A stretch of 64,000 nt of DNA from Ylistrum balloti (taxonomy: Eukaryota). The stretch is from assembly GCF_031769215.1 (NCBI RefSeq), contig NW_026781915.1, positions 1,054,001-1,118,000 on the forward strand, read 5' to 3'. The position numbers and the translations under genes are program-made. Shown one piece after another: positions 7,863-59,151 of this stretch; within the stretch, counting starts at the first letter, position 1, and every line of letters begins with the position of its first letter. Under the pieces are notes generated by a model that was given only the letters and a program-made list of their open reading frames with translations, was not told the origin of the DNA and made no database searches.

Positions 7863-7892
7863 GTAAGGATTTCATATTGTGTGTGGTTTCAG

Positions 7893-14152: not shown

Positions 14153-17100
14153 GTAGGTCACCACAGCAACATGCTCCCCGACAGCAGCATTCCAGCATTG
14201 GATCTGTACTTCTTATTTCTCTGTCAGGCAGAATATTCCTGTCAGATGAAGTTCTGGTGCTGTATGTTACACTTTCTGCGTGAGCTTAAAAAAAAAGAAT
14301 TGCTGATAGATGAATATTTATTTACAACAAATACTTTCTTGCAAAGAAAATATTGAAATATCAACATGTATGGTTAAGGTGAAGAAGTGTAAATCACAGA
14401 AACAGATAAACCAATCAACTGTAGCTTCTAATGTTTCCCTTATCAGACATGTCTCCATCATTACAGGACATGATGAATTTGGTGTGTATTTGTTGTTATG
14501 GGGTTGATAGAACTTCATTGCTGACAGAATTCTAGGAAAATTTTGTGTCATTAAACCCAAGATCTGTAGGATAAATTTCAACGTTACTGCCACAAAGTGA
14601 CGGCAACAGAGCGACCTACAGCAGTTGAAATTCATCTTCAGTTAATTTTCAACCAATCAAAACAGGGCTGACATTTGCTGCATGTTTTTGCTGTTTTTTG
14701 CTGTCAGTGTACAGCATTTAAACATTACATTGAAAGATGCAGGTAGAGTAGAAGTGATAAGAGTTCGATAATATCTCTGGTTGAATGTTGATTTACTTGT
14801 TATAACATGGATTAAAAACATATGTTCTGACAAACTTTAAATCAGATTGAAAGATGAAATGATGTTGAAACTTGTTAGTAACTGAAAAGAAATAAATTAC
14901 TGTTTTAATGGCTGAAAAAAATTAAAGATGAAACTGGATCAGCTTGCTGTGAAAAGAACGGAACAGGTGATTTCTCGTTCCTTACACTATCTGTGTACTG
15001 GAAGTCTATAGAGTATTTATTGTGTCGTATTACAATGTTTACATAATGGAACACTATAAAGCATTTCTCTTCCTTACAATATCTAAATAATGAAACACTA
15101 TAAAGTATTTCTCATTTCTTACAATGTCTGTCAGGTCAGGTTTGATGCAGAAGGTTCACAACATATCTTTGTACTGTCCAGTTAGTTGCACATAAATGCT
15201 AATTGAAACTGATTTCAATAGAAAGGTTGTCAGTCTACTTATCTCCCTTTATAAGGAAACATATCTCTTCTTTGGCACCCAATATCTAACCCTTTGCTTG
15301 TCTTCATATATCTATCAAAGTTTAATGAAATAAACATCTTGATAACTCACTTTGGTCTCCAATCTATGTCTAAATGGTCTAGTCACATTGTGAAAAATGG
15401 GGAAAAAATTATAGATATGTTATCGTCATGGTGATAGTGAAGCATGCAGTTACCATGAGCCATTGAGTCATCAGTTTTTGTGTTCCTCTGCTGCAAATGG
15501 AGAAAACATGTGCACATTAAAAGGAAGACGTCTTGAATGGAGATAAGATATTGGTATGAAAAAAATTATATTTGCTTATCTTTGATCGGTTAGTCAGCAC
15601 GTTTTTTAAGTATGGAGTAGCTTGTGAATTACTGCAATGTTGTGTGTTCATAATCTTAGGAGATAAAAGGTTGGTGAGAATATAGAGACATCTATCAACA
15701 ATACAGGGAAAAACCCATTAAACACTGACAGTATTTGTTCTTGTAGGCTGTAGAATAAATTAAAACTTTGAAACATTTGTTAACATTTGCTCTGTGTTAA
15801 CCTCATTTGTTTCCAATGTTTGTCAGAAAATGTGAAAATGGAGACAATTTGAGGATAAAAAAACCCCACCTTAGTGCTAATGTAAATCAGTTTTGAACAG
15901 TTTGCTTATGTTTTCAAGAAATGCAAGGCAGAAAATAACAGATTTAACACTCCAAAGATTCCAGGATACGATTTAGCAGCGTCAGTATTATCAGATATTA
16001 TGTTATACATATCTGCTGTAAAGACAGTAATTTTTGTGTGGATTTATTTTCGTTGCTTTTAACAGGTAATCTTAATTACTGAACTCATATGTCCATGAAC
16101 TGTTAAAATTTGTGTTTTACAAATCTATTGAGCTATGTTTATTTACGAAAATCTGTTGTCCACGAAACCATAATGTTTTAAAGAAGCAAGAAAATTTGTT
16201 TTTGTATAACTGTTAATTGTGAAAAAAAAGTCTTGGAATCCAAATATGAATATTGTACATTGATTTGAAATAGTAGATGTTACTGTTTTTACATTTTTGA
16301 TATTTGTAAGGTTTTGATCTTCTCAGAAATATACTACAATCATGTTCAAGTTGTTTTACTGTAAATCCATCAAAATGAACTCTAGAATCCATCAAATTTG
16401 TTCCCTATTAATTTACAAGTTTCTGTCATCAAATGTTCTTTGTCTGGTGTAACAGCATCCTTTTATTTTAAAAGTTTGTTGATTTGGCATGATTTCATCT
16501 CCGACTTTTGTAGTTAATGGATAAAGTTGTTTGTTTCAGGCAAAGTGTATTTTATTATTACTGGGATATACAAATCAGAAAAATAGGCTAGCAAAACAGA
16601 ATTTACTTATAAACAAAAAAAAAAATGTTTCGTCCTGTTGGTAGAACATTTCTGTAATTAGCTAGATCACAGTTAAGTAGATGATAGAGCACATTCATTG
16701 TTAAATCAAGTTACTTATATATTTCTCGCTACAAAAATATCAGCAGAATTTCATATGTTATGATTTAACTGCACTTGAATTAGGCGGTAATTGTTTTAAT
16801 TTCTTTGTGATTGAGAACATTTCTGTAACTCTAAAGACTCTTTCATGTAAGATTAAATCTTTGTTGTTTTTGTAGATTATGAGTCATAAAAATATCTTGT
16901 GATATCATGGGATGAAAATGTCTCCAGCAGTTTTCTCTTTCGTTTGCATTGCTTGTAACAATTAGCTGTAAGCTGCTATGAAAATTGTTATCAAAATTGT
17001 AATTACATACCAGGAGGGTGGGGGGAAGTAGTATATCCCCAGATGTGTGTTTAGCTACATGTTCTGGTTTTTGTAAGAGTTGGATTTATTTTACAGATCT

Positions 17101-17671
17101 GTATTCCAAAGTTTCTCTGAGATATATAAAACCTATACACAGCTGTAATTACATGTTAGATAATGCTTAGATTTAGGGGCACACAATTAGGGGAATGCAT
17201 TGGATTGTACATAAAATGATTTTATCAGGGCAGCTTGGAACAAATTCTTTCTGATCGAGTTTTCTTTGTTTTCACAGGAAGTCATTAGTGAATAAGTAGA
17301 TATAAAGTTTTTTTTTCAGATTGAGTGAAAAGCATATGAAATGTTTAGTGTTGAAAAATTAAATATTTGCTTAATTTTCCTGAGAAAAGTTACAAATAAT
17401 TGTAATTTGAAACATACTTCTGTTTTTTTATCCTGCTGTGGTATAACTGACTGTGATATATGTACAATTCACTTATTCTCAAGGAAGCCATTTTATTAAT
17501 TAAAGTGAGGCCAGCATACCTGTATATGTAATTATTACTGATCTGATGACTTTCAATGTTTAAGAAGAACTGTGAGTGTACTGCAGTTCTATTTAACTTG
17601 CACACATAAAAAACGGCTTAAAAAACTGAAAAGAAAGTTTTTCAGAACTGTTTAGTTAAGTATCTTATATA

Positions 17672-18050
17672 CAATGGTGGTGACCCTTGGTACAATTGTG
17701 GTTACCATAGATACAAATGTGGTTACCATAGATACAATTGTGGTTACCTTAGATACAATTGTGGTTACCATAGATACAATTGTGGTTACCTTAGATACAA
17801 TTGTGGTTACCATAGATACAATTGTGGTTACCTTAGATACAATTGTGGTTACCATAGATACAATTATGGTTAACTTAGATACCATTTTGGTTACCTTAGA
17901 TACCATTATGGTTACCTTAAATACAATTATGGTCACCTTAGATACCATTATGGTTACCTTAAATACAATTATGGTCACCTTAGATACCATTATGGTTACC
18001 TTAGATTCAAATGTAGTGAGCTTAGATACAAGTGTAGTTACCTTAGATAC
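17672..18050. repeat. 21-bp minisatellite (ttgtggttacc[a/t]tagatacaa)
   Basis: Tandem 21-mers; source of the 7-aa-periodic ORFs on both strands. Confidence 0.95.
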
Positions 18051-20844: not shown

Positions 20845-21340
20845 GGGACAGCCCCAGGTAGACTGGAGGGCTATGTTGTGAGTGGGACAGTCCCTTAGAG
20901 ACTGGAGGGCTATGTTGTGAGTGGGACAGCCCCAGGTAGACTGGAGGGCTATGTTGTGAGTGGGACAGCCCCAGGTAGACTGGAGGGCTATGTTGTGAGT
21001 GGGACAGCCCCAGGTAGACTGGAGGGCTATGTTGTGAGTGGGACAGCCCCAGGTAGACTGGAGGGCTATGTTGTAAGTGGGACAGTCCCTTAGAGACTGG
21101 AGGGCTATGTTGTGAGTGGGACAGTCCCTTAGAGACTGGAGGGCTATGATGGGTGAGGGACAGTCCTTGAAAGACTGGACGGCTATTTTGGGTGAGGGAC
21201 AGTCCCTGATAGACTGGATGGCTATGTTGGGTGAGGGACAGTCCCTGATAGACTGGATGACTATGTTGGGTGAGGGACAGACCCTGATAGACTGTAGGAC
21301 TGTGTTGTGGGTGTTGAGCAGTCCCAGATAGACTGGGGGG
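20845..21340. repeat. 39-bp minisatellite (gggacagccccaggtagactggagggctatgttgtgagt)
   Basis: Tandem 39-mers; source of ORF 20713..21402. Confidence 0.95.
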
Positions 21341-21534
21341 ACGTTTTGGTTGTGGGAAACCAAAGAACTTGGCATTGGCAGGACTCTTAATGTCTGAACC
21401 ATATTGAGAATGTCTTGGAAATTACAAGAATAAGGTTGAATTTGTGATGTCTACTAATATAGTATGAAATTCTAGCATACTATGTATAGTTAATCTATTC
21501 CTATATCCCCTTAAATCAGGGATTGTAGTGTTTG

Positions 21535-22545: not shown

Positions 22546-24215
22546 TCTTGTTTGTTTGTAATAAAACATAATACTTCGGTGGTTTTATTGCATAGAGAGT
22601 TTGCCAAGATCACAATCATCTTGTCACTCAGTCAGGGTGGGGTAGTGTGTTGACAAGATCTGTAGCTTTCAGGCTTCCCTTAGCTCAATAAAAAATGTGA
22701 GGAGGAGGAGGAGAGAACATCAAGAGATGGAGCTACAGCAGGGAACATTGATAGGAGTCTTTAAGGAGGATCAATGTCATGTTACCAATAACCAGAAGGG
22801 GCCAAGAAGAGTCTGTCGTCTGGGTTCCTGGGATTCTTGAGAGGTGTGGCTCTGTGTTTGCAGAAGTGAAATTTGTGTTTGTAAGACTCACTATCGGTAT
22901 ATAACATAAAAATTTTGTCTCCCATAATAGATAAATAAATAGATTTAGGCAGTGATTCTGAATCTCAATAATACATTATTATAACTAACTGTATGTAATC
23001 ATACAGACCCTATTTTTACTGGAGGGAAATGTCAGTTATTATATGATACTATAACTAGCTGTATGTAATCTATTTCTACTGAAGGGAAATGTAAGTAACT
23101 TAAACGGTTATTATGATACCATTAACATTTATTACTGTGTGATTGTTTATTGCTCAATGCCAGTAGTTAATATCCCCATCTCTCACCAGGTGGCAGGGTT
23201 CGCCCATGATTGGACTAACATGTAAACATTGCCTAAATACTTCTCATCCCAGACTTATATTAAAGGAGGTAGTGATGTTGAAAGGGTTAGTCTTCAGTTC
23301 ACCAAGTTTATCCCCTTTAGCCAAGATGTATGTAGATGTTACAAATCCTCAGACCTTCTAAACCGTGCAAATTATCCCTGCAATATTTCTAATGTTTTGA
23401 TAAGATTATTACCATAGATGTAAGACGGAACTCTGGGTAAATTTTCCTTTTACACTGATACTCATCTTGAGTTCAAATGTTGGCAAACAACTGTATCTTG
23501 ATGTACTGAAAGGAATTATGTTTGTATTTATCAAAGTAATATTTGTTTGTAAAATCCGTTTTTGTATGAGCAGTTATAATGTTACAATGTTTTGAACATG
23601 TGAATTGCAGGCATCATATACGTAATTACTGATGTTGGTCAAAACAATTTTTAAAAAAATCAAAATAAATAAAAATAAAGAAGATCGGCCAGGGATCTTC
23701 AGATATCCCTTTACATTAGGTGATGGTGTCAGTGAGGGCTTGTATAGATGTACAGTTCTCTTGACTTTCACCAGATTGGCTGCCCCTATCAGTGCTTACT
23801 GGTTACTGAACAGACGAGTAGGAAGTGAGGCATGATGCATGCGACTGCTGGGCTGATACCGGTAACAGAAATTGTTATTGGCATGAAGGATACACATACA
23901 GGCAGACAGAGGGGGTATCTCACTGTAGACCCCCCTCATCACTATCAGTCCTCACTCTCCATCAACTCTCTCTCTAATGTGATCTGGCTCTGGGCAGGAG
24001 TGCTGCTCTCTCTATCACTCACCAGATATGTGTTACAACCAAAGTGGATTTATTTCATATCTCCTAACATGTTTTGTGATGTATCATACGACCTTTTAAC
24101 CGTGTGAGAGTGTAGGGTCATTTCATACAGGCATGATTACCACAGAAAAAAGTACATTATTTACAGTAAATCATCTTTATCATAATAATAATATTTAAGA
24201 AACAGTATTTTTTTA

Positions 24216-24385
24216 TGACAATCACTGGAGTGTGTCCTGTGTGTAGTCTATGACAATCACTGGAGTGTGTCCTGTGTGTAGTCTATGACAATCACTGGAG
24301 TGTGTCTTGTGTATAGTCTATGACAATCACTGGATCGTGTCCTGTGTGTAGTCTATGACAATCACTAAAGTGTGTCCTGTGCGGA
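24216..24385. repeat. 35-bp minisatellite (atgacaatcactggagtgtgtcctgtgtgtagtct), about 5 units
   Basis: Direct tandem repeats. Confidence 0.9.
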
Positions 24386-24416
24386 GTCTTTAGGATAAGT
24401 TGTATGATGATGATAT

Positions 24417-24560
24417 ATGTTGTATTGTGAGGAATTCTTGTTGCCATTGTTCCATTTCTTTATTACCTTGGGATATTTCCTGATTCTAATGGAGAAGAAA
24501 CGATTCCCATTTAAACTTGGCTTTGGCCAGAAAAAAGTGAAATCACCTTTAAAGAAGCAG
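24417..24560 (+). CDS. Putative alternative first coding exon of the spectraplakin (48 aa, hydrophobic segment plus polybasic tail; a second in-frame ATG at 24489 gives 24 aa)
   Basis: ATG-initiated open frame ending in a strong CAG|GTAAGA donor in phase 0, compatible with the acceptor at 59152. Peptide MLYCEEFLLPLFHFFITLGYFLILMEKKRFPFKLGFGQKKVKSPLKKQ. Prediction only. Confidence 0.6.
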
Positions 24561-24587
24561 GTAAGAAGTTACTACAGTACTCTTATA

Positions 24588-25575
24588 GTAAATGTACTAT
24601 GTTGTAGTACGTGAACGATGGTAAATGTACTACGTTGTAGTACGTGAACAATGGTAAATGTACTATGTTGTAGTACGTGAACGATGGTAAATGTACTACT
24701 TTGTAATACGTGAACAATGGTAAATGTACTACTTTGTAATACGTGAACAATGATAAATGTACTACTTTGTAGTATGTGAACGATGGTAAATGTACTACGT
24801 TGTAGTACGTGAACAATGGTAAATGTAGTACGTGAACGATGGTAAATGTACTACTTTGTAGTACGTGAACAATGGTAAATGTACTACTTTGTAGTACGTG
24901 AACAATGGTAAATGTACTACTTTGTAGTACGTGAACGATGGTAAATGTACTACGTTGTAGTACGTGAACAATGGTAAATGTACTACTTTGTAGTATGTGA
25001 CACTACTTTGTAGTACGTGAGCAATGGTAAATGTACTACATTGTAGTATGTGAATGATGGTAAATGTACAACTTTGTAGTATGTGACACTACTTTGTAGT
25101 ACGTGAGCAATGGTAAATGTAGTACGTGAACGATGGTAAATGTACTACTTTGTAGTACGTGAACAATGGTAAATGTAGTACGTGAACGATGGTAAATGTA
25201 CTACTTTGTAGTACGTGAACGATGGTAAATGTACTACTTTGTAGTACGTGAACAATGGTAAATGTACTACTTTGTAGTACGTGAACAATTGTAATTGTAC
25301 TAAGTTGTAGTATGTGAACGAGGGTAAATGTACTACTTTGTAGTATGTGACACTACTTTGTAGTACGTGAGCAATGGTAAATGTACTACATTGTAGTATG
25401 TGAATGATGGTAAATGTACAACTTTGTAGTACGTGAACGATGGTAAATGTACTACGTTGTAGTACGTGAACGATGGTAAATGTACTACTTTGTAGTACGT
25501 GAACAATTGTAATTGTACTAAGTTGTAGTATGTGAACGAGGGTAAATGTACTACTTTGTAGTATGTGAATAACAA
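24588..25575. repeat. 33-bp minisatellite (gtaaatgtactac[g/t]ttgtagtacgtgaacgatg) with an internal 7-bp inverted repeat
   Basis: Tandem 33-mers with deletion variants; source of the minus-strand FTYYKVVHLPS ORFs. Confidence 0.95.
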
Positions 25576-28500
25576 TAACCATTGTATTACAGTAATCTTG
25601 TCAATTCATTTCTTTATATTAAAGAAAATGATATTTTTCTACTTTTTATATTACAAACTATTCTTTTAGACAGACAGTATAAACAAATCTGTAGGTGAAT
25701 AGTTTTGGAGTGTATTTTGTTTTGATTGTCTGGGCGATTCAGACATATTGTGTTTATTGTACTACTTGGTCCTTACTTTCATCTTACATGTAGCTCCCCT
25801 AGACATACGCAGCAGATCTTAATATTGGATTACTTTAATTGCCAATTTGTCAGAACATTGGAAAGTTTGGAGCTCATTAAACTTGATCCGACACATGTTT
25901 CTGGTTTGTTTAATCACTGGCTCCCTCAAACATGCTCTGATACCTGCCTGTGGAGGAAAGTGTTGAGATTCAACTAGAGCTGACATGTTTGAAGCGCCAA
26001 GTTGTTTAAGTGGGGACTTAGGAACATGTTTTTCAAGTACATGACAGCATCATGGTGTCAGTGGTAAGCACAGTGTAAATGAGCCGTGATGTGGTTATAT
26101 GGCAGATTCTTCACTGAAATCTCATCAAAACTCAGGTTACTGATAGTGTTTGTAAATTTCAAACATTCAGTAAAACTTCAGTATGATGGCCTTCTTTTCA
26201 ATGGCAATCTTGTTGACCCCACCTTCACCTTTATGTAAATTCTTGTATATGCCAAACCTCATTGTAGTACACACTTTTTACTGGAAAGATGACAGCAATT
26301 ATTGAACTAGGTTTTACTGTAGTCACATGGAAAGTTTGGAAGTTGAATGTTTCTATAGATTGACAGCAACTCAAGAAAATTTCACTGTGGACTACACAGA
26401 TGTATTGTCATCATGATATAGAGGTCACAATACAATCTATACTTTGTGATATGCCAAATCTGCTCAGTTATTCTGCAAAATTTTGTCAAAATGTCAAATC
26501 ATCTTTATATATATATTTTCCTGTCTATTTTAAATGTAGCTGTCATATTATACAAACTGCTCTGGTTTTATCTGTTTCTAAGCCTCTTCCCTTTTTTGAT
26601 CAATGTAAATTCAAATCAATTCTATAATTTGGATTTGAAAACTTGGAAGTAAGTTGATAATTCTTTTTTTTTTATTTCATCTTCTTGATGGTCTACTATT
26701 GGTAATCACTCTTAGTGTCCCAAAACTCTTGATATAAAGAGGAAAAATCAAGCACTCAGCTGACCATGAAAACAAAGCACTTACAGTTGATTTGAATGAT
26801 GAAAACCAGTTTGTATCTTCCCCCTGTGACAGAGTAAAATGATATAACAATAGATTTATCAGACAATATGTCCATATAAGGTTATACTTACTTAATCTTA
26901 ATGCAAGTTGGTGGCTGTGAATACAGTGTTAGTGCCAGTGAATACAGCTGGGAAGAGATTAGGTAAACAAAGGTTTATTATTGCCTTCATTGCTATATTC
27001 TTTGACCTCCTTCCTATCTTATTTAATTACCATTTTTTGGCTTGTCTTCAGCAATTTCTATATGTTTTCATATATATCATGTACAGTAGTACATAGTTGT
27101 CAGCTGGCGACCTTTCGGTATATCTGAATTGGCTTTTTGTGTATATGTAAGTCTTCCAAATTACTGTCAATTTTTTCCCTCTCCAACAACCTATCTGTTG
27201 ATCTTGTGTTACCTTTGCAATGCATTTTTTGCTTGTTAGATGAAGAAATAATCTTTTATGCAGGAATTAAGTCCTGAAGTAATCTTGATGTTGTATCAGC
27301 TTGCAGAAATATTATTGTGTTGAAAATAATACCAATGTTTCTCAGGGTAGAGTTTGAAGATTTCAAATCTTTGTTAATGTGTTACAATAAAATTTGGATG
27401 CTTTTCAAGCTTTTGATTGACCAAGATTACATCATATTCAGGAAGCAAGAGTAAAAAAGATTTTTCTTGGCACAGACATAATATAAATTGGTCCAGATGC
27501 AAGAAATTACACAGAAATATACTACTGATGTGAAATGAGGGGATCCCAGTCGCAGATTAGTGTAGGTATGTGTGGGGTATGGTGTAACAGATGCATTGTC
27601 GGCATAGTAACCAATACCAGGCTATCTACATCCCATAATATTACATCTGGAATAAACAAAGCATTGTTAGACGTTTTTTGAATATTGTGAATTTTATTTC
27701 AACACAACTGAAATGAAGCAGAAATTTGATTTAAGAGTATACAAGCTTAAAGATACACAAGGAAATAGAAAAACAAGACCTAGTAGGCAGTGATTTCAAA
27801 ACCTTTTATTGGATGTCTCCTTCCCAGTTTGTCTCAATCTGTCTAATTAGTCACTAATTGATCTCACATGAGGAGGGCACCAGAATGTACCTAAACAAGA
27901 AGCAGTCACTGGAACCAAGTTCCAGATTAAAGAGATAAAAATGACAGAATCAATATTTAGGGGTTTTACCTTGGTGTACCACGCTGGTGTAATGTGTGTT
28001 ACACAAGCAGTTTTATGACATTATTTCCATTTTCTTTTTGGATATAATTTACTTTAAAGAAAACATTTAAAATTTCATTAAATTGTTTTCCTGGCTTTTA
28101 TGCCGTCTTTGAAATTATTACTTACGTCAATGAAATTTGAGAATATGTAAAACTGCTGTTGACAGAATCTTGTTTAAAAACAAGGCTAAGAATCGTACAA
28201 CAGATGACTGAAAAAGGATGTTTGTCTGTAACAGTTTAGCTACATGTGTTCCTGTCATCTACTTGGCCTGTGTCAGAGACGTGATTTTGTTAAATATGTG
28301 CTTGTCGTCTGTCGAGTTTTTGTCAGAGGCATTTTCACCATTCCTGATGAGATAGACCCTTTTTTCGGTCTATCATTTACCAGTCTTGTGTCTGTCGCAA
28401 ATTGGGATTGATGCCTCGTCAGGTCGGGTTTGATCTTATCTTCATGGCGGAAGAAAAAACATCACAATCTATATGTTCCTGATCCTTACAAAGTCTGCAG

Positions 28501-37658: not shown

Positions 37659-38027
37659 ATGATCAAGTGGACATGGAATTTATTAGAAAAAGCCAGAAGT
37701 ACTCCAGACATTTCCTCACACAATGGCCACTTTCTGGCTCCAGAACAACGGAGTTACTTCCCCTGGAGGCGTTTGTCCCCTTCTCCACTGCCGGTCCTCA
37801 GGGTAGTGCGCCCCTGTCTTAGATGTGGTTGTTACTATTCTTGTATGTGCGGCTTGTCTCCATGGCTAAAGACCAGACGGCCATCTTTACAGGAAGCTGT
37901 CCGCGGACTATTACTTCCTGACACCCTCACAGTGCGTCGGTGGTCTTTCCAAAACACCATCAGGAAGTTGTCTGAACCTAATGTCGTAAGAAGATATTCG
38001 CTTCCAACAAATATTGAAAATTATGTG
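37659..38027 (+). CDS. Putative alternative first coding exon (123 aa, Cys cluster, five R-R/K-x-S motifs)
   Basis: First 123 codons of non-repetitive ORF 37659..38150, locally more GC-rich. Phase-0 donor GTG|GTAAAA at 38028 (moderate strength), after which the sequence reverts to AT-rich intron-like DNA. Confidence 0.65.
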
Positions 38028-38719
38028 GTAAAAGGGATTTCATACGATATTCTCTCATTATTCTCAGTTCACTTTTCATTTTATGACGATGTTGCATGGA
38101 TTAAAACTTTGCCTTTCCTTCTCCAGCCATTTAAAAATGTATTTTTGTAAACAGATATATTCTATATGAAATTACATGTTTACTAATGGTTTTTATCCAA
38201 ACTACTTGATTTAGAATTTTTGTTCATTAATATTTCATATTTTTTTACTTGCACATATTGACATGAATACTGTCCTGTAGTTATGAAGTATTAGCTAAAA
38301 CTGTGTCTACCACAGGTGGCTGTGGTAGGGAAGGCAACAGTGCTGTAATATGTAGGTAGCTTGTTTTAGTTTTCACTGCTAATGTCACGTCACTGCCTCA
38401 TTTTCTCTAGTATTAGTCAACATCTACTATTGATTCATCAGTGTCTGTTGCTATCAGTTATCATGTATGGCTATGTTGTATGCCTTTTGTTTACAAATGG
38501 TTTTTGGACTCTGATAGGACATTTGCAACATATGTTGTTTGATATAGCTTTAGTTACATATGGATTCTTAATGGTTTCTTATATGACTTAAGTTAAAAAT
38601 GGTTTCTAAATGGTTTCGATGGTTTCTTATATTTCTAAAGTTACAAATGGTTTCATATATGGCTTTAGTGACATATGTTTTCTTATTTGACTTTTTAAAA
38701 CCAAATGAGAAAAATCTCT

Positions 38720-44535: not shown

Positions 44536-45384
44536 ACTGGTACATGTATATCTACTGGTAGACGTAACTTTACATGGGTTATTGTCCACCTATTGTAGAT
44601 GTAAGTTGATGTTGTTTTAATTATTTAACTTCATTATGAATTAAGCACAAATTTGTGATTTTTCTATTATTTGTGATTAAATGAGTTATAATCATTTAAA
44701 TTAAAACCTAAAAGCAGTCTTTGTTATGGTAATTATTTATTCCTGCCGTGACTGTAAAAAAGAACAAACAAAAAATTAATTGTCAGAATTTTTATTATCC
44801 AGAATAGACTATCCATTCTTTTGGCAAAGTTCCATTTATTTGAAATTTAGATCATTTTGAATCAAGACCTATAGAAAGAGATGTGTTAATGATTTTGCGT
44901 AAGTGGTGTTTTGTCACTCCGACATATCACCTGCTTTGGTGGGTTTGTATGCTTTAGGGTGTTTCTTTAATATCACTTGTCCATGTCTGTCTGTTACCTG
45001 ATATGGGAAACTCCTGTTGTGCCACATATATGCAAATTAAAGCAAATACACTGAAATATATCATAATAGGGGTATATTTACCTGACTCTGAAACGTCTCA
45101 AGGGTAAATATAGGACAAACATTATTTTTATTGAAGAAGTTTTATTTCTTCTAAGCTATTGACACAATAACCCTGTATAAAGTTAGGTTTTCAGGTTGAT
45201 GTACAAATTAAAAAATAATTTAAATTGTTTGGTCAGTAAAATTCTTGTTTTGATTTTTAATCACATTTTGCTTTGTTCAACACTTACGTGTCTGGATGCA
45301 GTTAACCTAAATAAAGATGTAATCGTGGGTCAGTTGTGCCACCTATATTTATACATAAGTAGTAATTCTGGTATGTTATGGTAG

Positions 45385-46345: not shown

Positions 46346-49300
46346 GAATCTATTTATAGCTTTACAATTAACTTATTGAATGACCTCTGTGTTTATTCAG
46401 GTATGTCAAAATATGATTTACATCATTATTGGTGTGTGTTGATTATTCAGTCACCTGTGTCAGGGTATGATAACGGGATTATAGATGTAGTTGTACAGTC
46501 AGGTGTGTCCAGGTATAATAATCTATTTATAGATTTATGTGTTCATTCAGGCATGTCATTTATTTTCAGCCAAGCGTGCCAAAATCTGATGAATCAATTT
46601 TTAAATGGTAGGATTTACCTATTGATAGATATTGAGGGTTGACCAATGAATGTCAACCCAGAAATCCTATTATGTATAACACAATATTTCTCACTGGACT
46701 GGACAAAACCAATTTTCTATCCAGTTACCTGGTTATCTATGCCTGTAAATTGGCAACCATTATCGGTGTATAGAGGTATTTGTCTACTGTTTGTGTATTA
46801 CCTCCGGTGATTGGATAAGGTGTGATAAGGGAAGTGAGTGTTCAATGGCTACTGTTGGGAGTTGATCAAGCTATCAGCTCACACTCTCCTTCACATTACT
46901 GCTAATTATATCCCATTTACCTGCCCATTCCCAGTGCTAGCAGCTTTACACAAAACAATTCTAAAAATCCCCTTACATTGCATCTGTGGAATAAGAAGCA
47001 TCTTTGAGTGATTGAAATCTATGATATTTACAATTAAAGTCAGTTGTACATTCATTCACTGACTTCCTTCTCCTTATATATTTTGAATGAAGACAGCATG
47101 CTGTAGGATGACTATGCTGATACAACCCATTCAACATACAATTATATGTATGTTGTTGGCATATACACTGATTATGTGTGTGTCTACATGTAGGTATTAT
47201 CTTCCACAAGTCTGGGAGCCAGGATTTCTGTTTGTTTGAAGTGGGTGTGCTTGAATCCATGGAGATACATTCCCTGTTACTTTCTCAAAGTGAATCGTTA
47301 TTGTTAGGAAAGTGCTAGAAGAAAACCACATGACAAGGAACAAAGTGCTAATGATTTTTACCTGATCAGGTTTAGGTGTAAGCTGAGGAATTCATTAGAA
47401 ATGAATCGCTGAGAAAATGGAATAAATTACAAGGTCATCATGCAAATAAAATGTGTGACTGAATTTTATAACTTCTGTGATCGTGATGTCCTCATATGTT
47501 ATACGGTAGTTGAAACCGGTGAAGGCAGTTCATCTCAAACTATGGGCCAGGAAATATTTAAAAATTTGTAAGGTGCCCTTGTTGATTTCATTGGAGTTAA
47601 ATGACTGTAAATTAAGAGGTAGGCTATATGACACAGCCACTGCAGCTAAGATTACAGTTTATCATTGTGTATCGTGTAGTGATTTGTACTCCAGTGTTTA
47701 AGAAGAGTTCATTATCCGTGCAGTTGAGCTCGTGCCAGAGTGATTGCCTAAGAACTATGAGTGATGGGAAGATATATCTACACTAACAATGTCAGCTGAG
47801 ACGAGGATGCAGTTAAAACCGACATTTTTTGATGATATGTCTTGTGCCATTAATTCTGATCTAATCCAAGTAGATTTGATTTCAGTTGGAGATTCCTTTC
47901 TACAAATTTGTGATTATGACGTGGTGGATGTCGGAGGACACGCATATAGATATAGTGTAAGGTCATCTTCAGTTAAAAATGGATTTGACACCTAGTTTAA
48001 ATATATCACAGATTTGAGAAAATCAATTCATTGGATTAAGTGGAGGAACCTGTTTCTGATACTAAAGCAAGACTTGTTTCAGATTGAGGATATTGAGATG
48101 TTAAATTTTAATGTGTATCATTATTAGGTGAAGTTCTTGCATGGAGGAGAAAAAAGTAATGGCTTAACTTTATATACATTTGCCTTAGAAGATAAATTGC
48201 TTGATTAAGTGATTTTGGACAGCCAAAGCCTGAGGGTACATTATAAGAGTGACCAGAGGTCATTGGCTAGACAGATACATGTATGTCTAAACTGGTCATT
48301 GGAGTAGGAAGTGACCAGAGACAGGTGTGACATAGGAGTCGTCAAATTAATTTATTAGTCGGCTAAATCTGATTAGCAGTATATTATGAACACATGGGAG
48401 GTGGTCATCTGAGACAGTTAACACTCAACGATTCATTCGGACACTCCAGTCAGATTTGGTCTGCCTGTCAATCAGTTACACCTGGTTGGGTTAGGGCTAC
48501 AGGCTTGACAAGAATTCTAGACCAGGCAGGCAACAACGCTCAGGTGACACAGGGGATAGGAGGTGGAGACGACCCAATTGTACAGGTCCAAGTTCTCCGT
48601 GCATCAGGAATTTTAAGTCTGGGGATGATAGCCCTGATATTGGGATAACACTGATCCCTTTATCAATAATCAATTTTTACCTGGCCAGGTAGATACCTGG
48701 TATTAATTACCAGTAAAGAAATATTAGTGAGAAAGACAAAGTGTTGGCCATGGTCTGGATATAAACGGGGATACATTTTATAACAAACCTGTTTTATAAA
48801 CATCATCAACAGATCATTGTTCCATGAAAAAAGTCCTGTGACATATGAGTATGATGCCTGTGTATATTATATATGCGGGATGATAAAGGTAAATCCCCAT
48901 GTCATCAGGAGTGTGGGCGTCGACCAGAACCCATCGGCTGAAATAATTATGGGGTCAAGATTAAGTTAAGGATCCCTATCACCCAGGTATTCAGTTGGGA
49001 CCACACCACAATCTAGACCTGCTGGACACACCTGGAGTGAGGCTCAGATCTGTCCATACTGGAGTATTCCAGACACCACAAGGATAGTGTGCTGTGTAAC
49101 ACACTCAAGTTTGTTTCAAACCTACCGCGGTGCCATCCTACTCGAGGCATTGTCTTGTGATCAGAAACTCTTGGCATACAGGGTATATAGTTGGTATTGT
49201 GAAGGGGTGCCCGGTAATGAGTGGGATTACTCCGTGTCTATAAGCATTTAAATACCTTGACCTGTTTTAGGAGCTAATTGTTGATGTGTATGTGGCCTGA

Positions 49301-49647
49301 ACCGCAGCTAGGAGTGTCCACTTGTACTCCAGTGTTGACATTTTTTTCGTGCAATTATTTTTTAAAAGTGCAAAACTACAATTTTACCCTGACAGGATCA
49401 TTAAATCTAAATATTTTATTATGTTTAACAACATTAAAGCGATGTCATATGGACGTCCATTGTGTACGCAGGACATAGAAGTGTAGACAACAACCCCAGT
49501 GTGAATGAATGAAGAGTTTTCGCTCGAGTGGAATATGTTACCGTCCCCTGTATGGAGTACACATGTTCGGGCCACATCATACACCTGTCCTCTCATGAAG
49601 CCAAAATGGATTTAATTCGTTTACATAGCTTGGAGTAATTTTTCGCC

Positions 49648-49749
49648 ATGTTTGGATGTTTCGGAAAGAAGAAAAAAAAGTTAAAGGGGAAAGCCCCACT
49701 TGACAGTAGAAGGGATGTTTGTAGTAATGAAGAGCAACCGGATCAACAG
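49648..49749 (+). CDS. Putative alternative first coding exon (34 aa): MFGCFGKKKKKLKGKAPLDSRRDVCSNEEQPDQQ
   Basis: ATG in good context (cgccATG), open frame to a strong CAG|GTATGA phase-0 donor, and a motif-like peptide. Too short for the ORF track. Confidence 0.65.
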
Positions 49750-50700
49750 GTATGATATTGCTAGGTGGGTTGGTACTACAGGTGGAATATTGTATAATGG
49801 GTTGGTGCTACAGCTATGATATTGTGTGATGGGTTGGTGCTACAGGTATTATATTGTGTGATGGGTCGGTGCTACAGGTATGATATTGTGTGATGGGTCG
49901 GTGCTACAGGTATGATATTGTATAATGGGTCGGTGCTACAGCTATGATATTATGTGATGGGTTGGTGCTACAACTATGATATTGTGTGATGGGTTGGTGC
50001 TACAGCTATGATATTGTGTGATGGGTTGGTGCTACAGCTATGATATTGTGTGATAAGTCGGTGCTACAGCTTTGATATTGTGTGATGGGTTGGTGCTACA
50101 GCTATGATATTGTGTGATGGGTTGGTGCTACAGGTATGATATTGTGTGATGGGTTGGTGCTAAAGGTATGATATTGTGTGATGGGTCGGTGCTACAGCTA
50201 TGATATTACAGGTATGATATTGTGTGATAAGTCGGTGCTACAGCATTGATATTGTGTGATAAGTCGGTGCTACAGCTTTGATATTGTGTGATGGGTTGGT
50301 GCTACAGCTATGATATTGTGTGATGGGTTGGTGCTACAGGTATGATATTGTGTGATGGGTTGGTGCTAAAGGTATGATATTGTGTGATGGGTCGGTGCTA
50401 CAGGTATGATATTACAGGTATGATATTGTGTGATAAGTCGGTGCTACAGCTTTGATATTGTGTGATTGTGTGATGGGTTGGTGCTACAGGTATGATATTG
50501 TATGATGGGTTGGCGCTACAGGTATGATATTGTATGATGGGTCGGTGCTACAGCTATGATATTGTGTGATGGGTTGGTGCTACAGCTATGATATTGTGTG
50601 ATGGGTCAGTGCTACAGGTATGATATTGTATGATGGGTCGGTGCTGCAGGTATGATATTGTATAATGGGTTGGTGCTACAGCTATGATATTGTGATATGA
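49747..50700. repeat. 32-bp minisatellite (caggtatgatattgtgtgatgggttggtgcta)
   Basis: About 30 units, starting exactly at the donor of candidate exon 49648-49749. Confidence 0.96.
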
Positions 50701-53344: not shown

Positions 53345-53585
53345 CCCTACTCCAGGTTCTTACCAGCTATAAAGATACCTAGATTTGTGGACTAGGACAT
53401 CCCTCATCTTGGTCCCTGCTAGGGCTATAAAGACATCTAGAGACCTTGACTAGGACGTCCTTCCTCTAGGTCCCTGCTAGGGCTATAAAGACATCTAGAG
53501 ACCTGGACTAGGACGTCCTTCCTCTAGGTCCCTGCTAGGACTATTAAGACATTTTGAGACCTGGACTAGGTAGTCCCTGAGCTAG
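53345..53585. repeat. 58-bp tandem repeat, about 4 units
   Basis: ggtccctgctagggctataaagacatctagag recurs at 53411 and 53469. Confidence 0.88.
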
Positions 53586-56054
53586 GTCTCTTATTAAAGC
53601 TATATTGGCACTGGTAGATATGGACTGGGGTGGATAGCCAGGAGATTAATGATCCTAAAGGTTGTAGGTCATTAAGCTCATTTCAAACTTGATGCAAGAT
53701 AACAGTTCAATCACCAAGAAGCTTGTCATTATTGTTGTGATGAATAGTCAAGCTTTTTGTTAACCACACATGGACCTACACAGGCACGGGGCCAAATGTC
53801 ACACTAACAGGTTAAGTTGTCAGAAATTGAGATATTAGATGTTAATTACTTGCCCAACTGATACAGTGTTTCTGATACTGTAACCAATAAGCTTTTGGGA
53901 AAAAAACTAAGGTAGATTTACGATCAAATTTGCATTGTTGTGACTACACAGCCAATAAGAGAAAATTACATAAGTATGGTTTTAACAGAATATCATATTC
54001 TGTGTAATAATGATCTCAATTTAATGTCCCATTTGAATCTTTGTCCAGCCAGGTATACCTGTATAATGAATGGACTTTTCCTTTGGACTTCAAGTATAGT
54101 ATAAGGTCAAGGGTCATTTAACACTAAATGGTACCAGGTCATGGTATTAAACTTTTCACAGGAAATTCCTTATGACCATACTTGACCATCCTATAAGAGA
54201 TGGACCTATACAGAACACAATGGTTAACGTTTTGACAGAAATAAGGTCTATTGGTCTGTGTAATGAATTACAATTAGCTGATGGAAGTGTTTGTTGATTT
54301 CTAAAGTAAAACTTGGTATAAACACTAATAAAAATGATTCAGTGTCCAGTAGTTGTAACTGACCGCTTGAGAAACTCTTTGAGCTGATATGAACTTTCAG
54401 TATGAAGTGGTCATTTGCCGCAATAAAGGTACGAAACGAATGAATATTAAGTAGTAATTTATAATAAAAACTGCTTAAAATGAATATTGGTGAAAGCATT
54501 TCTTGTTTACCTGTTTTAATATGCTTGTATTAACTTCTCTGAGACTTTTCACATTTAACAAGTAGATATATGGTGGAAATGAACCTTATTATACAAACAG
54601 AACACCATCTGTGTAAGAATTTATAATTATACATGTGTAACGTACCTGTCAGAGCGAATCTCTGTACTCAATATGCCTTTGATCTTAACGTGACAAGGAC
54701 ATAATGACAATGCTGTGATAGGACAGTTTAGTGACTTTTTTTAAGAAGGACCGTTATCTGTGCTTTGTTGTGCTTGTAATGACATTGTGATATTTCATTT
54801 TAGTGTCAGACCATGATTCCTATTTGTTTTGTGTAATCTTAAGTCAAGTGAACACAAATAAACGTTCTATTTACTGTTGGAATGTTATTGTTGTAATAAA
54901 GAGTACGGAAGCGCCGTCAGCCTAACGTCTGCGACAAGAAACGTCATGATAACAACTTTTAAAATAAATAGATCTTCACAGATCGAATGCCTTCACCAGT
55001 GCAATGACAAATTTTCTGTACATATTTTCAAGAACTTCATTGATACGATTTTGCTGACTGCCTTAATACAAATATTTGTATGTTGATTTTCAGTAAGATA
55101 TCTAGGTCATTGCCTTACGTAGGTTTTTTTTACGTTGCCTGTCCTGTATTTAAATGGCTGTATTTCCTTTAGGCCCCGTGTACGACCTGATCTGTTATTT
55201 TGGTTCGCTGTGGTCTGTGATAATACAAACTCGCTGAACCATGGTTATCGTTTTGACATATTTTTCATCACAATGAGCAGGGATCATCCTTTATGTTTTA
55301 TGGAGGAACGTTGTAATAACTTCGGGGTGTGTTTATTTTTCTGCTCGATGATGTTTTGTAAATATAGGACAAAATTTCATTTTAAAGAAGTCATTCTTGC
55401 ATAAAAAATATTCATAGATAAAATAGGCGTTTTATCAAGATTGTAGTGAAGATACATATTTGAAAAAGGGGAAAATTATAATGATATGCTTGATTTTTAT
55501 AATATATTTAAATCCATCAGCAAACTTGTGTATACATGTGTTATTGAAAGATGAAAGAAAAATAAAATGTATTTATCAGTTTAAAAGACCAATTCAAGAC
55601 TTCATTCTTATAGATACTGCTGGACAAGTCCTATGCTGTCTTTAGAAGACATATGATTTTTGTTTTGTTGGTTTGTTTTTTCAATGCTATGTGGTTCTAT
55701 TACACACCATTTGAACTGAAATACTGTTAAAATAGTCTTATTAAGTTAGTTTTTTTTGGACAATTTTTACGTGGTATATGTATTAAAGTATCAGGAAAGT
55801 AGGACCATTACCACATGTTGTCTGACAGACATATCAGCTTTACTGTATGTTTCACCAATAGTGTTATCAGGTTTTATAATGACATTGAATGGTGTCTGTA
55901 TCATGATAATTCTTGATGACTAAACTTTGAGTTAGTAGTGGGAACTATTCCAGCAGTTCTTATTCATGTGTACTACAATTGGTGTGGTTAAAACTACTTC
56001 CCATGGTCATTTGGACCTCTTGTTGCACTCTGTCTGTACCAGAGGTGTTCAAGT

Positions 56055-56640
56055 GGCATCTTCTCACAACCTCCTTCCCAGGGGTGTTTGTATATCATCT
56101 TCTCTAAACCTCCTTCCCAGGGGTGTTTGTGTATCATCTTCTCACAACTTCCTTCCCAGGGGTGTTTGTGTGTTTGTATATCATCTTCTCACAACCTCCT
56201 TCCTAGGGGTGTTTGTGTGTCATCTTCTCACAACCTCCTTCCCAGGGGTGTTTGGATATCATCTTCTCACAACCTCCTTCCTTGAGATTTTGTTTGTCAT
56301 ATGCATTACCCCTTCCCAGGGGTTTTGTGTGTCATTTTTTCACAACCTCCCTCCCAGTGACATTTGCATTTCATCTTCTGACAGCTTCCTTCCCAGGGGT
56401 GTTTTTTTTATCTTCTTCTCAGAACATCCTTCCCAGGAGTTTTGTGTTTGTAAGTGTGTCATCTTTTCACAACCTCCCTCCTAGTGGTTTTTGTGTGTCA
56501 TATTCACGCAACCTCCCTCCCAGAGGTGTTGCTATGTCTTCATCTCACAGCGTTAATATTTGAAATGTTCATGAGTTATCCCTTTACGACATACAACTCA
56601 GAAGAATTTTTCTTATACCCTTTCAATACCTACATCCCTG
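56055..56640. repeat. Degenerate 39-bp minisatellite (catcttctcacaacctccttcccaggggtgtttgtgtat)
   Basis: Tandem repeats; source of the SSSHNLLPRGVC ORFs. Confidence 0.9.
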
Positions 56641-59151
56641 GGGGTTAGCTGTGTCATATACCTTCAACCTCCCTCAAAGGTCCTTTTCTGTGCTTTTATC
56701 CTATCCCGACCTCTATCCCACTTGTGTTGCTTTATACTCTCAATGTGTTTTTCATTGAAAGTTTTTGTTTGTGTTGGTTAGCAACAATCTTCATTTCTCA
56801 TGTATTTACATTTCCTTACAACTTACATAGGCATGTTTCTAAACAACTTGATTAGAAAGGCTTGTTTCTGAGGAGCTTTGTTTGTAAAAGACATGTTCTT
56901 GAAAACTCGTTTTGTAATAAATTTGTTGTTAAAGAGCTCATTTGTGATGGACATGAATATGAATTTTTTATTTGCAACAGACATGTTTTTTAAGAAAAAT
57001 CCCTCTAAGCCAGACAGTTTGTTTTAGAATATATAGATATAGTTAGTGAGTTTGTCAGACTCTTTGTATGCTTGATATGTCCTGGCCTTGTAGGATAAAT
57101 CTTATGTCACTGATGTGGTGTCCAGAGGGTGTGATGTATATATCATCTGTTGCCAACTAACAAGACAGAGCTTAACATGATAATGCTTCTGGGGTTTAAT
57201 TTGAAAATGAAAATGACAATGACAATTTCTTTGCCTGTTGAGGACAGTGTAATATGTTGGTGACCATTTCTTTACTTGTTCAGGAAGGTGTTGGTGACCC
57301 TGGTCAAATTTCCTCTCCTAGCACAGAAATGTTAGTTTTATCTATTTACTCAATAGGGCAGATACACACAGAACTGTGGTCATTCCTAACAGGGATGAGT
57401 GGTCAGTTATTTCTGATACACATATTTAACTTGTTTTCCTAAATATCTTATAAAAATCATTTTAGAATCTTAAAATACTTGAAATGACTCTGTTCTATAA
57501 AACATCAATTTGGTCACTGAGTATTGAGTGAGAGTTTCAACAAATTTTATTTAGTTATTGAGATTTTGAAGTACAGGGTTATCTGTAAAACAGTCTTTAT
57601 GAAGAAGTCAGTGTTGAAACTCTTCTGGAAGAAAATAAATTTACACTGTCTAGTCGACAAACTTAAACAGCAATAAACTTTTTCATGGAGTCTTAAATTC
57701 CAAACTGTTGAAGGTCTTAGATCAGACATAAATAATCATGAGATTCAGGTGTATTTTGTACTTGAATTTACAATTTCTGTCTATATTGAAATAAGTCTGA
57801 CCTTTCCCCTCTCACCATGCTAAATGACAGGTTTTAGGCAAGCTTCCCTTTAATCATACCTCTGATGATATGAAGTTTTCAGCTCGTATTTATGGTAGTT
57901 GTGTGATGCTTTTTGGTCTGTCATGGTGAGTATTTACGACAGTTATGTGATGTGGAGGCCTGTTGGGGTGGGAGATATGGTCTATATATCTTTCAACATA
58001 TCTCTCTAGTTCAATTTGACAAGAATTAGTCTCTGTGGGAGATTGGCAAATAGGAGAGGGTTATTTCTTTCACTTTCTCTGATAAAAGGGAGACATCTTT
58101 ATCCCAGAGTTTGAGACACTGGCTCCAAAGTGGCACTTTTCACTAAAGTGTACAAACAAACCTCTAAAGCCAATTACTGGCGTCTTGGTCAAATGTTGTG
58201 TACACATTGTATGTCTAATCGGCTATATATTGTCTATGGGATATGAGGTTCAAATCATGTGGGATCGCAAAATTATCAGCGATAATATATAGCAGTATTC
58301 ATGGTTAATGTCTGTCCTTTTTCATTTCAATTGTTTTGGTTGGTTTTATGGGGAATCAAACATTCTCACCTGGTCCAGGAAAATAGACAGAACTTTTACA
58401 AACAAGGAAGATGATACATATTGTACGTGTAATTCAAAACGTTCTTGACTTGCATTTAACAAATAACACTAACAAAAGGCACAGCTTGAAAACTCCCAAC
58501 GTTTTGACGTTAAGTGGAAAATTAAAGAAAAATTCATCGTTTTTTTTAGAAGAAATAGAACACCCTGGCACATTTAATGGCTGTAAAATTCTATTATGTA
58601 TGATAAATTTCTGATTATTTAAACAATTCTTTTTGACATTGATTTATCAGCTCAGACTTTGTGATGCAATTTTGTGGTTATATGATTTGATTAAGTATTA
58701 TTCATGCTGGTGTTACTTTGTATCAGAATGTCTTGATTTATTTTACAAAGACTGCATGTTTTTTTCTTATGAAAATGCTAACTCTTTTGCATTTGATTGA
58801 AATTTTTAAGTAGTCATCAGTGTTATTGATGTCTGGAGTAACTTGTGATTTAGAAAATGGTTTTGATATTCCTGACTACAATTAAATGGAAAGTTTTGTT
58901 TATATAGATATCATGCCTGGAGTGATCCCTTTGGTTTTAATCGTTTCCGAGCAATATTTTATGGGTCAAGTTCATTGGGTCAAATGTCACACCAGGACTC
59001 CATTTTCTGATGTTGTTTGGTGGGGGATGTATCTTAATGAGCACTTGTTCACTTGACTTTATTTCATTGTGTTGTCTAATAATTGTATTGCATGAAAGTC
59101 ATTTAACTATGAATGTCAGCCATGATTGTAATGTGTCCCCCTGTGTTGTAG

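What the first reader, a model, noticed from the sequence alone, without database searches (positions are those of the whole stretch)
14153..59151. Battery of phase-0 alternative first exons in the 45-kb CH1-CH2 intron: a modular N-terminal targeting system for CH1-less spectraplakin isoforms
Seen: this intron is about 8 times longer than any other in the window. It contains several non-repetitive ATG-to-donor frames, all in phase 0 and so joinable to VSDVVVPG at 59152. The best are 24417-24560, 37659-38027 and 49648-49749; weaker ones are at 28473, 31158, 47789, 48394, 14928 and 54946. The three best each carry a different recognisable targeting feature: TM plus basic, Cys cluster plus kinase sites, and Cys plus poly-Lys. 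Known: plectin has many alternative first exons upstream of CH1 that direct localisation, and dystonin a2/a3 use TM or lipidation leaders. Inference: here the variable-leader cassette sits after CH1, so each isoform would trade the main F-actin-binding CH1 for a membrane address. I do not know of such an array described at this position. Caveat: any donor-like site has a fair chance (roughly one in four) of an upstream in-frame ATG before a stop, so the weak candidates may be noise.
Basis: partly seen in the sequence, partly recalled or inferred. Interest (0 to 1): 0.9.

Follow-up and report, generated by a model that had tools for sequence, protein, structure and literature searches.

The report
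One conserved membrane-anchor leader, not a battery
In the 45-kb intron between the two actin-binding half-domains of an invertebrate spectraplakin gene, only one of the nine proposed alternative first exons has support: a short cysteine-plus-polylysine leader also found in annelid relatives, which is this animal's version of the already known CH2-only (type 3) isoform.

Summary
The window holds the 5' part of a lophotrochozoan (mollusc-like) MACF1/dystonin/shot-type gene. The 45-kb intron (14153-59151) between the last CH1 exon and the first CH2 exon is real. The three "best" ATG-to-donor frames exist exactly as described.

The battery as a whole is no more than chance. Phase-0 sense-strand frames number 6, against 2-7 in each other phase and strand. 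The features cited for c1 and c2 are common in chance ORFs of this intron: a TM-like stretch in 23%, five or more Cys in 16%. Neither c1 nor c2 matches anything in the stretches upstream of the CH2 exon that were available from relatives.

Candidate c3 (49648-49749, starting MFGCFGKKKKK) has good support:
- The same kind of leader (MFCGCGRKKKKK-type) lies 1-4.6 kb upstream of the CH2 exon in three related genomic loci.
- It forms the N-terminus, joined directly to CH2 with no CH1, of two predicted proteins (Paralvinella KAK2164152 and UPI00078A5AA4).
- c3 ranks first of 1,253 ATG-started peptides in the window against those leaders.
- It lies in a CpG-retaining patch.

A CH2-only isoform from a promoter downstream of CH1, carrying a lipidation-type leader, is already known (Shot C-type, MACF1/DST type 3, dystonin-a3). 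This is a new member of a known kind. No transcript data could be checked.

The parts
7773..7862 (+). CH1 exon (AGRRILDLYSDLKDGHNLISLLEVLAHESL), phase 0 at both ends
   Evidence: tblastn with Haliotis MACF1-like P0018 and P0013
8544..8621 (+). CH1 exon ([26 protein letters not shown])
14060..14152 (+). last CH1 exon ([31 protein letters not shown]); its donor at 14153 opens the 45-kb intron
   Evidence: 100% identical to P0013 over 32 aa
14153..59151 (+). 45-kb CH1-CH2 intron. It is rich in minisatellites and strongly CpG-depleted (window-wide median CpG o/e 0.21).
24417..24560 (+). candidate c1 (48 aa, hydrophobic then basic). Unsupported and probably a chance frame between two minisatellites.
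   Evidence: Frame exists. No Pfam match. No conserved counterpart. CpG o/e 0.32. TM-like stretches occur in 23% of chance ORFs.
37659..38027 (+). candidate c2 (123 aa; the ORF runs on to 38150). Unsupported, with a weak donor GTG|GTAAAA.
   Evidence: the donor scores below 3
49200..49900 (.). CpG-retaining patch around the c3 leader (o/e 0.64-0.80, against a window median of 0.21). It may mark an unmethylated internal promoter.
   Evidence: the promoter reading is inferred, not shown
49648..49749 (+). c3: coding part of the type-3 (CH2-only) alternative first exon. 34 aa starting MFGCFGKKKKKLKGK, purine at -3 of the ATG, donor CAG|GTATGA in phase 0.
   Evidence: Homologous leaders in L001, L008 and L010 and in proteins P0185 and P0186. 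Rank 1 of 1,253 ATG peptides.
49746..50694 (+). 32-nt minisatellite (about 30 copies). Its first unit contains the c3 donor.
59152..59318 (+). first CH2 exon (VSDVVVPGQPEDITAKEALLLW...), the acceptor shared by the CH1-containing isoforms and the c3 isoform
63288..63403 (+). second CH2 exon (..PDLVDLQRARTSTPRQNLELAFSIAEKEYGVTRLLDPE)

Best explanation
The 45-kb CH1-CH2 intron of this spectraplakin gene contains one alternative first exon with comparative support, c3 (49648-49749). It would be transcribed from an internal promoter and spliced in phase 0 to the first CH2 exon at 59152. The product would be the lophotrochozoan version of the known type-3 / C-type spectraplakin isoform, which has CH2 only and lacks the main F-actin-binding CH1. 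Its N-terminus (Met-Phe, one or two Cys in the first 4-7 residues, then 5-7 Lys/Arg) most likely works as a membrane address: S-palmitoylation of the Cys plus electrostatic binding of the polybasic run to acidic lipids, as in GAP-43-type leaders. Shown: exon anatomy, phase, and conservation of the leader and of its junction to CH2 in predicted proteins of relatives. Inferred: use of the exon in this species, the promoter, palmitoylation, and membrane targeting. The other eight frames (c1, c2 and the six weak ones) are best explained as chance ATG-to-GT frames in AT-rich DNA where minisatellites multiply donor-like motifs.
For: The exons and the 45-kb intron are mapped. The c3 frame and donor are as described. 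Related genomic loci carry the same leader on the sense strand upstream of their CH2 exon. L001 has MFCGCGRRKKKKKAKKYSTPVQ|GTAACT, phase 0, 3.6 kb upstream. L008 has MFCGCGRKKKRKKGED.. (60 aa, |GTGTCT), 4.6 kb upstream. L010 has MWCGCGCGRKKKERD.., 1 kb upstream. The loose motif scan gave only two or three other hits in about 293 kb of both strands. Two predicted proteins start with this leader and continue straight into CH2 with no CH1: P0185 (Paralvinella palmiformis KAK2164152, MFCGCGRKKKKKAKGG.., 61-aa leader) and P0186 (UPI00078A5AA4, MFSCISCKSKKRKRK.., 30-aa leader). The leaders align with M1 and a Cys invariant and a shared basic run. Scored against the five foreign leaders, c3 is first of 1,253 ATG-started peptides in the window: mean BLOSUM62 score 28.6 against 14.6 for the runner-up, z = 6.0. 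c3 lies in a CpG-retaining patch, at the 95th percentile of the window. The battery is at chance level. c1 and c2 have no family match or conservation, and their 'features' are common in chance ORFs. The literature describes the same architecture and a lipidation-type leader in DST, MACF1 and Shot (10.1101/122010, PMC3352950, PMC3279385, PMC7325434).
Against: No transcript, CAGE or splice-junction data for this species could be consulted, so use of c3 here is inferred from conservation. The relatives that carry the leader are fairly distant (71-73% identity on the CH2 exon, apparently annelid-like). The closer mollusc-like contigs (L002-L006, L009) have at most 4 kb upstream and show no clear copy, apart from a doubtful MCRDGTSCWALRRKRRR frame in L006. 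The window's leader has one early Cys rather than two. The c3 donor is part of a repeat unit, so the donor itself is not independent evidence. Absence of c1 and c2 in distant relatives, within 20 kb upstream only, does not exclude lineage-specific exons. The c2 ORF (163 codons to its stop) is somewhat long for chance. P0185 and P0186 are gene models, not experimentally verified proteins.
Confidence: 0.72

Rival explanations
1. One reading: several of the frames (at least c1, c2 and c3) are functional alternative first exons, forming a modular set of N-terminal addresses for CH1-less isoforms.
For: All three frames are intact, in phase 0 and end at GT. c1 has the best donor score of any frame in the intron (7.6). 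The c2 ORF is the longest non-repeat ORF in the intron, and its 3' part lies in a mild CpG-retaining patch at 37700-38300. A further CpG-retaining patch at 54600-55500 overlaps the weak candidate at 54946. Plectin shows that batteries of first exons exist in this superfamily (general knowledge).
Against: The number of such frames equals that in the wrong phases and on the wrong strand. c1 and c2 have no counterpart within 20 kb upstream of CH2 in two relatives, nor in any other fetched locus. Between those two relatives tblastn recovered only the CH2 exon; their short low-complexity leader itself was below its threshold. There is no Pfam match. TM-like and Cys-rich features are common in chance ORFs here. 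CpG o/e at c1 and c2 is ordinary (0.32 and 0.36). c1 is preceded by two out-of-frame ATGs within 10 nt.
Confidence: 0.1
2. None of the frames is used in this species. The c3 resemblance is a relic of an ancestral leader exon or a low-complexity coincidence, and CH2-only isoforms are not made here.
For: No expression data are available. The match rests on a short, lysine-rich peptide. The donor is part of a minisatellite unit. The window's leader has only one early Cys, against two in the relatives.
Against: The ORF, the ATG context, the phase-0 donor and the position on the sense strand inside the correct intron are all intact. c3 is the top-scoring ATG peptide of 1,253 by a wide margin. There is local CpG retention. 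The same leader is kept in at least five other lophotrochozoan sequences.
Confidence: 0.08
3. c2 (37659-38150) belongs to something other than the spectraplakin gene, such as a decayed transposon or gene fragment, or an independent intronic transcript.
For: A 163-codon ORF in unique sequence is longer than expected by chance for this composition (own estimate, roughly 0.04-0.8 expected; ORF list). Local GC is 0.46, with mild CpG retention.
Against: No Pfam match, no similarity to any fetched locus, and an Arg/Ser/Pro/Cys-rich composition typical of non-coding GC-richer DNA.
Confidence: 0.1

Closest known systems
Type-3 / C-type spectraplakin N-termini (mouse and human DST and MACF1 isoform 3; Drosophila Shot C-type)
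   Same: A first exon transcribed from a promoter downstream of the CH1-coding exons is spliced to the first CH2 exon. The isoform has CH2 only and weaker F-actin binding (10.1101/122010, PMC3352950, PMC7325434). c3 has this position and phase, and relatives' protein models show the leader-CH2 junction.
   Different: The leader sequence is lineage-specific. No similarity to the vertebrate or fly leaders was tested here because their sequences were not retrieved. Expression is unverified in this species.
Dystonin-a3 (BPAG1a3) myristoylation-motif leader
   Same: A short N-terminal lipidation-type motif on the CH2-only isoform, reported to direct it to the plasma membrane (PMC3279385 and PMC3352950, citing Jefferson et al. 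2006).
   Different: c3 and its relatives have Phe (or Trp), not Gly, at position 2, so N-myristoylation is excluded. The predicted chemistry is Cys palmitoylation plus a polybasic run.
GAP-43-type N-terminal membrane anchor (paired Cys followed by basic residues)
   Same: Cys residues within the first 3-7 residues are followed at once by a Lys/Arg cluster. This comparison rests on my own knowledge of GAP-43 and was not tested here.
   Different: An unrelated protein, so analogy only. The window's copy has a single early Cys (Cys4).
Plectin battery of alternative first exons
   Same: The idea that alternative first exons set the subcellular address of a plakin-family protein.
   Different: In plectin most alternative first exons lie upstream of the exons coding the actin-binding domain, and many have transcript support. 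Here only one exon has any support, and it lies between CH1 and CH2.
Branchiostoma lanceolatum plectin-like isoforms X4-X9 (XP_066280133-139)
   Same: Annotated CH2-only N-terminus: a 23-aa leader joined to ISDIIVPGQ...
   Different: The leader (MAEGGRSPYDLRSRDKNRVEHAM) has no Cys/polybasic motif, and these are short 385-400 aa models.

Membership tests
Spectraplakin type-3 / C-type (CH2-only) isoform first exon | The first exon lies downstream of all CH1-coding exons and upstream of the first CH2 exon, on the sense strand | tested here: met
   c3 at 49648-49749 lies inside intron 14153-59151
Spectraplakin type-3 / C-type (CH2-only) isoform first exon | The leader joins the first CH2 exon in frame | tested here: met
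   The phase-0 donor at 49750 and the phase-0 acceptor at 59152 are compatible. The same leader type is joined directly to the CH2 start in P0185 and P0186.
Spectraplakin type-3 / C-type (CH2-only) isoform first exon | Own promoter / transcription start site | tested here: inconclusive
   CpG o/e is 0.69-0.80 around c3, against a window median of 0.21. This fits an unmethylated promoter, but other patches exist and no TSS data are available.
Spectraplakin type-3 / C-type (CH2-only) isoform first exon | Transcript that joins the leader to CH2 in this species | not testable with these tools
   No transcript resource for this genome. The short protein fragments found were genomic read-through ORFs.
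Dystonin-a3-type N-myristoylated leader | Gly at position 2 (required by N-myristoyltransferase) | tested here: not met
   Position 2 is Phe in the window, L001, L008, P0185 and P0186, and Trp in L010
Palmitoyl-Cys plus polybasic N-terminal membrane anchor (GAP-43-like) | Cys within the first ~8 residues next to a cluster of Lys/Arg | tested here: met
   Cys4 and K7-K11 in c3; Cys3/Cys5 plus R/K runs in the relatives. None of 134 chance ORFs in the intron has this combination.
Palmitoyl-Cys plus polybasic N-terminal membrane anchor (GAP-43-like) | Demonstrated S-acylation and membrane localisation | not testable with these tools
   Needs acyl-exchange chemistry and imaging of a tagged leader
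Battery of alternative first exons (plectin-like modular system) | Several independent first exons, each supported beyond chance | tested here: not met
   Frame counts equal the wrong-phase and wrong-strand controls. Only c3 is conserved.
Dystonin-a2-type transmembrane leader (considered for c1) | Conserved hydrophobic TM segment in a leader exon with evidence of use | tested here: not met
   A hydrophobic stretch is present (KD19 = 2.13), but 23% of chance ORFs also pass. There is no conservation and no Pfam match.

The most novel reading that the evidence does not exclude
Two readings remain open. First, the Cys/polybasic leader of the CH2-only isoform is ancient, shared by annelids and this mollusc-like genome, and functionally equivalent to the myristoylation-motif leader of vertebrate dystonin-a3. 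Membrane tethering of a CH1-less spectraplakin would then be an ancestral bilaterian function rather than a vertebrate speciality. Second, the intron may hold a further internal promoter, for example the CpG-retaining patch at 54600-55500 or c1, giving more than one CH2-only isoform.
Probability: 0.3. Interest if true: 0.5.

Novelty: new member of a known kind. Interest (0 to 1): 0.3.

Why it matters
The check reduces a nine-exon 'battery' to one exon with comparative support and places that exon in a known isoform class. This prevents over-annotation of chance frames in a repeat-rich intron. The useful result is a sharply defined 10-15-residue motif (M-F-x-C-x-C/G followed by 5-7 K/R) that marks CH2-only spectraplakin isoforms in lophotrochozoans. 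It can be used to annotate these isoforms in mollusc and annelid genomes. It also gives a simple, testable handle (Cys-to-Ser change, GFP fusion) on why animals keep a spectraplakin form that lacks CH1 and carries a membrane-type leader instead.

Tried and rejected
- A search with the CH2 exon for short protein fragments returned only genomic read-through ORFs, not spliced transcripts. They were useful only as anchors for fetching related loci.
- A region search with P0186 residues 1-70 found only the query itself, so the wider spread of the leader could not be charted.
- The metagenome contig scan gave four loci with at most 3.3 kb upstream, too short to reach a leader.
- Look-ups of Dreissena KAH3699010 (not on record) and Potamilus KAK3581860 (gene range too long, no DNA) failed. 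No bivalve intron could be examined.
- Walking 10 kb further upstream in the two long contigs found no CH1 exon and no c1 or c2 counterpart. It shows only that the CH1-CH2 intron exceeds 19 kb there too.
- Nucleotide-level comparison of the intron with the first three related loci (L001-L003) found nothing. Between L011 and L012 only the CH2 exon aligned at nucleotide level.
- Rfam and tRNA scans of the window were empty.
- Pfam on c1, c2, c3 and two other frames was empty.
- Jefferson et al. 2006 is not held in the library, so the vertebrate type-3 leader sequence could not be compared.
- A literature search for minisatellites that start at splice donors found nothing relevant.
Full report
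**What is in the window**

The + strand carries the 5' part of a spectraplakin (MACF1/dystonin/shot-type) gene.
- tblastn with a Haliotis MACF1-like protein (P0018, XP_046365486) and a metagenomic fragment (P0013) maps the exons. The CH1 exons are 7773-7862, 8544-8621 and 14060-14152. The CH2 exons are 59152-59318 and 63288-63403.
- The best named matches to the first CH2 exon are molluscan: Haliotis at 78%, and a cluster that includes Dreissena at 79%. An unnamed metagenome contig reaches 89%. The animal is a lophotrochozoan, probably a mollusc.
- The CH1-CH2 intron is 44,999 nt. The other complete introns are 681, 5,438 and 3,969 nt.
- All exon boundaries around the long intron are in phase 0.

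**Checking the observation**

The three best frames exist exactly as stated. The battery as a set is not above chance.
- I scored every GT with one donor matrix and asked for an in-frame ATG at least 20 codons upstream with no stop. The sense strand gives 6 frames in phase 0, 4 in phase 1 and 7 in phase 2. The antisense strand gives 2, 5 and 4.
- The intron is unusually rich in minisatellites. Several units carry AGGTA-type motifs, which multiplies donor-like sites. The c3 donor is the first unit of the 32-nt array at 49746-50694. c1 sits between the arrays at 24214-24389 and 24588-25569.
- The 'targeting features' of c1 and c2 are weak evidence in this AT-rich DNA. Of 134 chance ATG-ORFs of at least 40 aa in the intron, 31 have a TM-like stretch and 22 have at least five Cys.

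**Which candidates have support**

I fetched related genomic loci, using the CH2 exon as the anchor.

A loose motif scan was run on both strands of the window and the ten loci then held, about 293 kb of strand in total. It asked for Met, a Cys within six residues, and a run of at least four K/R within 22 residues. It returned only eight ATGs.
- Four are clearly alike. All four lie on the sense strand upstream of the CH2 exon:
  - the window's c3, MFGCFGKKKKKLKGK..;
  - L001, MFCGCGRRKKKKKAKKYSTPVQ|GTAACT, phase 0, 3.6 kb upstream;
  - L008, MFCGCGRKKKRKKGED.., 60 aa, |GTGTCT, 4.6 kb upstream;
  - L010, MWCGCGCGRKKKERD.., 1 kb upstream.
- A fifth, in L006, also lies on the sense strand upstream of its CH2 exon, but its similarity is doubtful.

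Independently, two long predicted proteins from the homology search begin with the same leader and run straight into the CH2 start without CH1.
- P0185 is Paralvinella palmiformis KAK2164152: MFCGCGRKKKKKAKGG.., a 61-aa leader, then ISDVIVEGQ...
- P0186 is UniParc UPI00078A5AA4: MFSCISCKSKKRKRK.., a 30-aa leader, then ISDVIVPGQ...

The six leaders align with Met1 and a Cys invariant and a shared basic run.

I then scored every ATG-started 15-mer of the window, on both strands, against the five foreign leaders. c3 ranks first of 1,253, with a mean BLOSUM62 score of 28.6 against 14.6 for the runner-up.

c3 also lies in one of the few CpG-retaining patches of a heavily CpG-depleted gene body. Its o/e is 0.69-0.80, against a window median of 0.21. 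It has a purine at -3 of its ATG.

c1 and c2 have nothing comparable.
- No Pfam match.
- No conserved peptide in any fetched locus.
- No counterpart within 20 kb upstream of CH2 in the two long contigs.
- Ordinary CpG content.
- Between those two relatives, tblastn and blastn recovered only the CH2 exon; the short, low-complexity leader fell below their thresholds and was found by the motif scan instead.
- The c2 ORF, 163 codons to its stop, is somewhat long for chance, so a small residual probability remains that it is a relic of something else.

**How it most likely works**

c3 would be the first coding exon of a transcript started inside the CH1-CH2 intron and spliced to 59152. The resulting isoform keeps CH2 and everything downstream but lacks CH1.

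The leader has no Gly2, so N-myristoylation is excluded. An early Cys followed by a run of Lys/Arg is the classic arrangement for S-palmitoylation plus electrostatic membrane binding. This comparison with GAP-43 rests on my own knowledge.
- Shown: the anatomy, phase and conservation of the leader, and its junction to CH2 in relatives' gene models.
- Inferred: expression in this species, the promoter, acylation and membrane targeting.

**Comparison with what is known**

The architecture is not new.
- Reviews describe N-terminal variants with CH1+CH2 (A/B-type, type 1/2), CH2 only (C-type, type 3) or neither, made from alternative start sites and promoters in Shot, MACF1 and DST (bioRxiv 10.1101/122010; PMC3352950).
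- Dystonin-a3 has a putative myristoylation motif and goes to the plasma membrane (PMC3279385, PMC3352950, citing Jefferson et al. 2006).
- Amphioxus also has annotated CH2-only plectin-like isoforms, with an unrelated leader.

What appears to be undescribed is the specific conserved Cys/polybasic leader of lophotrochozoans. It exists only inside unnamed gene models.

**Verdict**

One conserved type-3 leader has support; the rest is best read as noise. It is a new member of a known kind and of modest interest.

Noticed in passing
window 5694-5741 (+): A 48-nt phase-0 cassette micro-exon (cag|TGG..CAG|GTTTGT) encodes WSPLPVDYMQHWRFSQ. It lies upstream of CH1 exon 7773; the preceding KWVNKHLLK-coding exon was not found in the window. 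Haliotis cracherodii MACF1-like isoforms X14 and X15 (XP_071119796/97) carry the near-identical insert WYPLPVDYMQHWRFSQ at that point in CH1. It therefore looks like a conserved alternative insert inside the actin-binding CH1 domain.
   Followed up: partly
window 7863-8167, 8622-11303, 24561-25569, 49746-50694; L001 10246-10300: Minisatellites begin at, or within about 30-110 nt of, 5' splice sites. Several units repeat a donor-like motif (GGTAAGGAT, ACAGGTATGA; in L001 GTGAGTCAG.. starts exactly at the CH2-exon donor). All are G+T-rich on the sense strand. The 33-nt array at 8735-11303 has 78 copies. I could not tell whether this is a mutational by-product of donor-proximal sequence or has a role in splicing.
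   Followed up: partly
window 8444-8558: A 60-nt tandem duplication copies the polypyrimidine tract, the acceptor and the first bases of exon 8544. This leaves a decoy acceptor (ttttagCCAAGAGAGAAGGGTAATTAA) 60 nt upstream of the real one.
   Followed up: no
window 54600-55500: CpG o/e is about 1.0 in a gene body whose median is 0.21, in unique sequence 4 kb upstream of the CH2 exon (e.g. GTACGGAAGCGCCGTCAGCCTAACGTCTGCGACAAGAAACGTCATG). This may be a second unmethylated regulatory element or promoter. No conservation was found.
   Followed up: partly
window 1-64000: GC skew is positive in 29 of the 32 2-kb bins, so G exceeds C on the sense strand almost throughout (cumulative skew 4.36 over 64 kb). 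T also exceeds A in 29 of the 32 bins. This fits strong transcription-associated strand asymmetry, or the G/T-rich minisatellites.
   Followed up: no
L011/L012 (relatives of L008/L001): In both long related contigs no CH1 exon lies within about 19 kb upstream of the CH2 exon. A very long CH1-CH2 intron is therefore shared across these lophotrochozoans. L012 1010-3757 holds a 915-aa ORF with no family hit on record, and L001 12559-15543 holds a reverse-transcriptase/endonuclease ORF just downstream of the CH2 exon.
   Followed up: no
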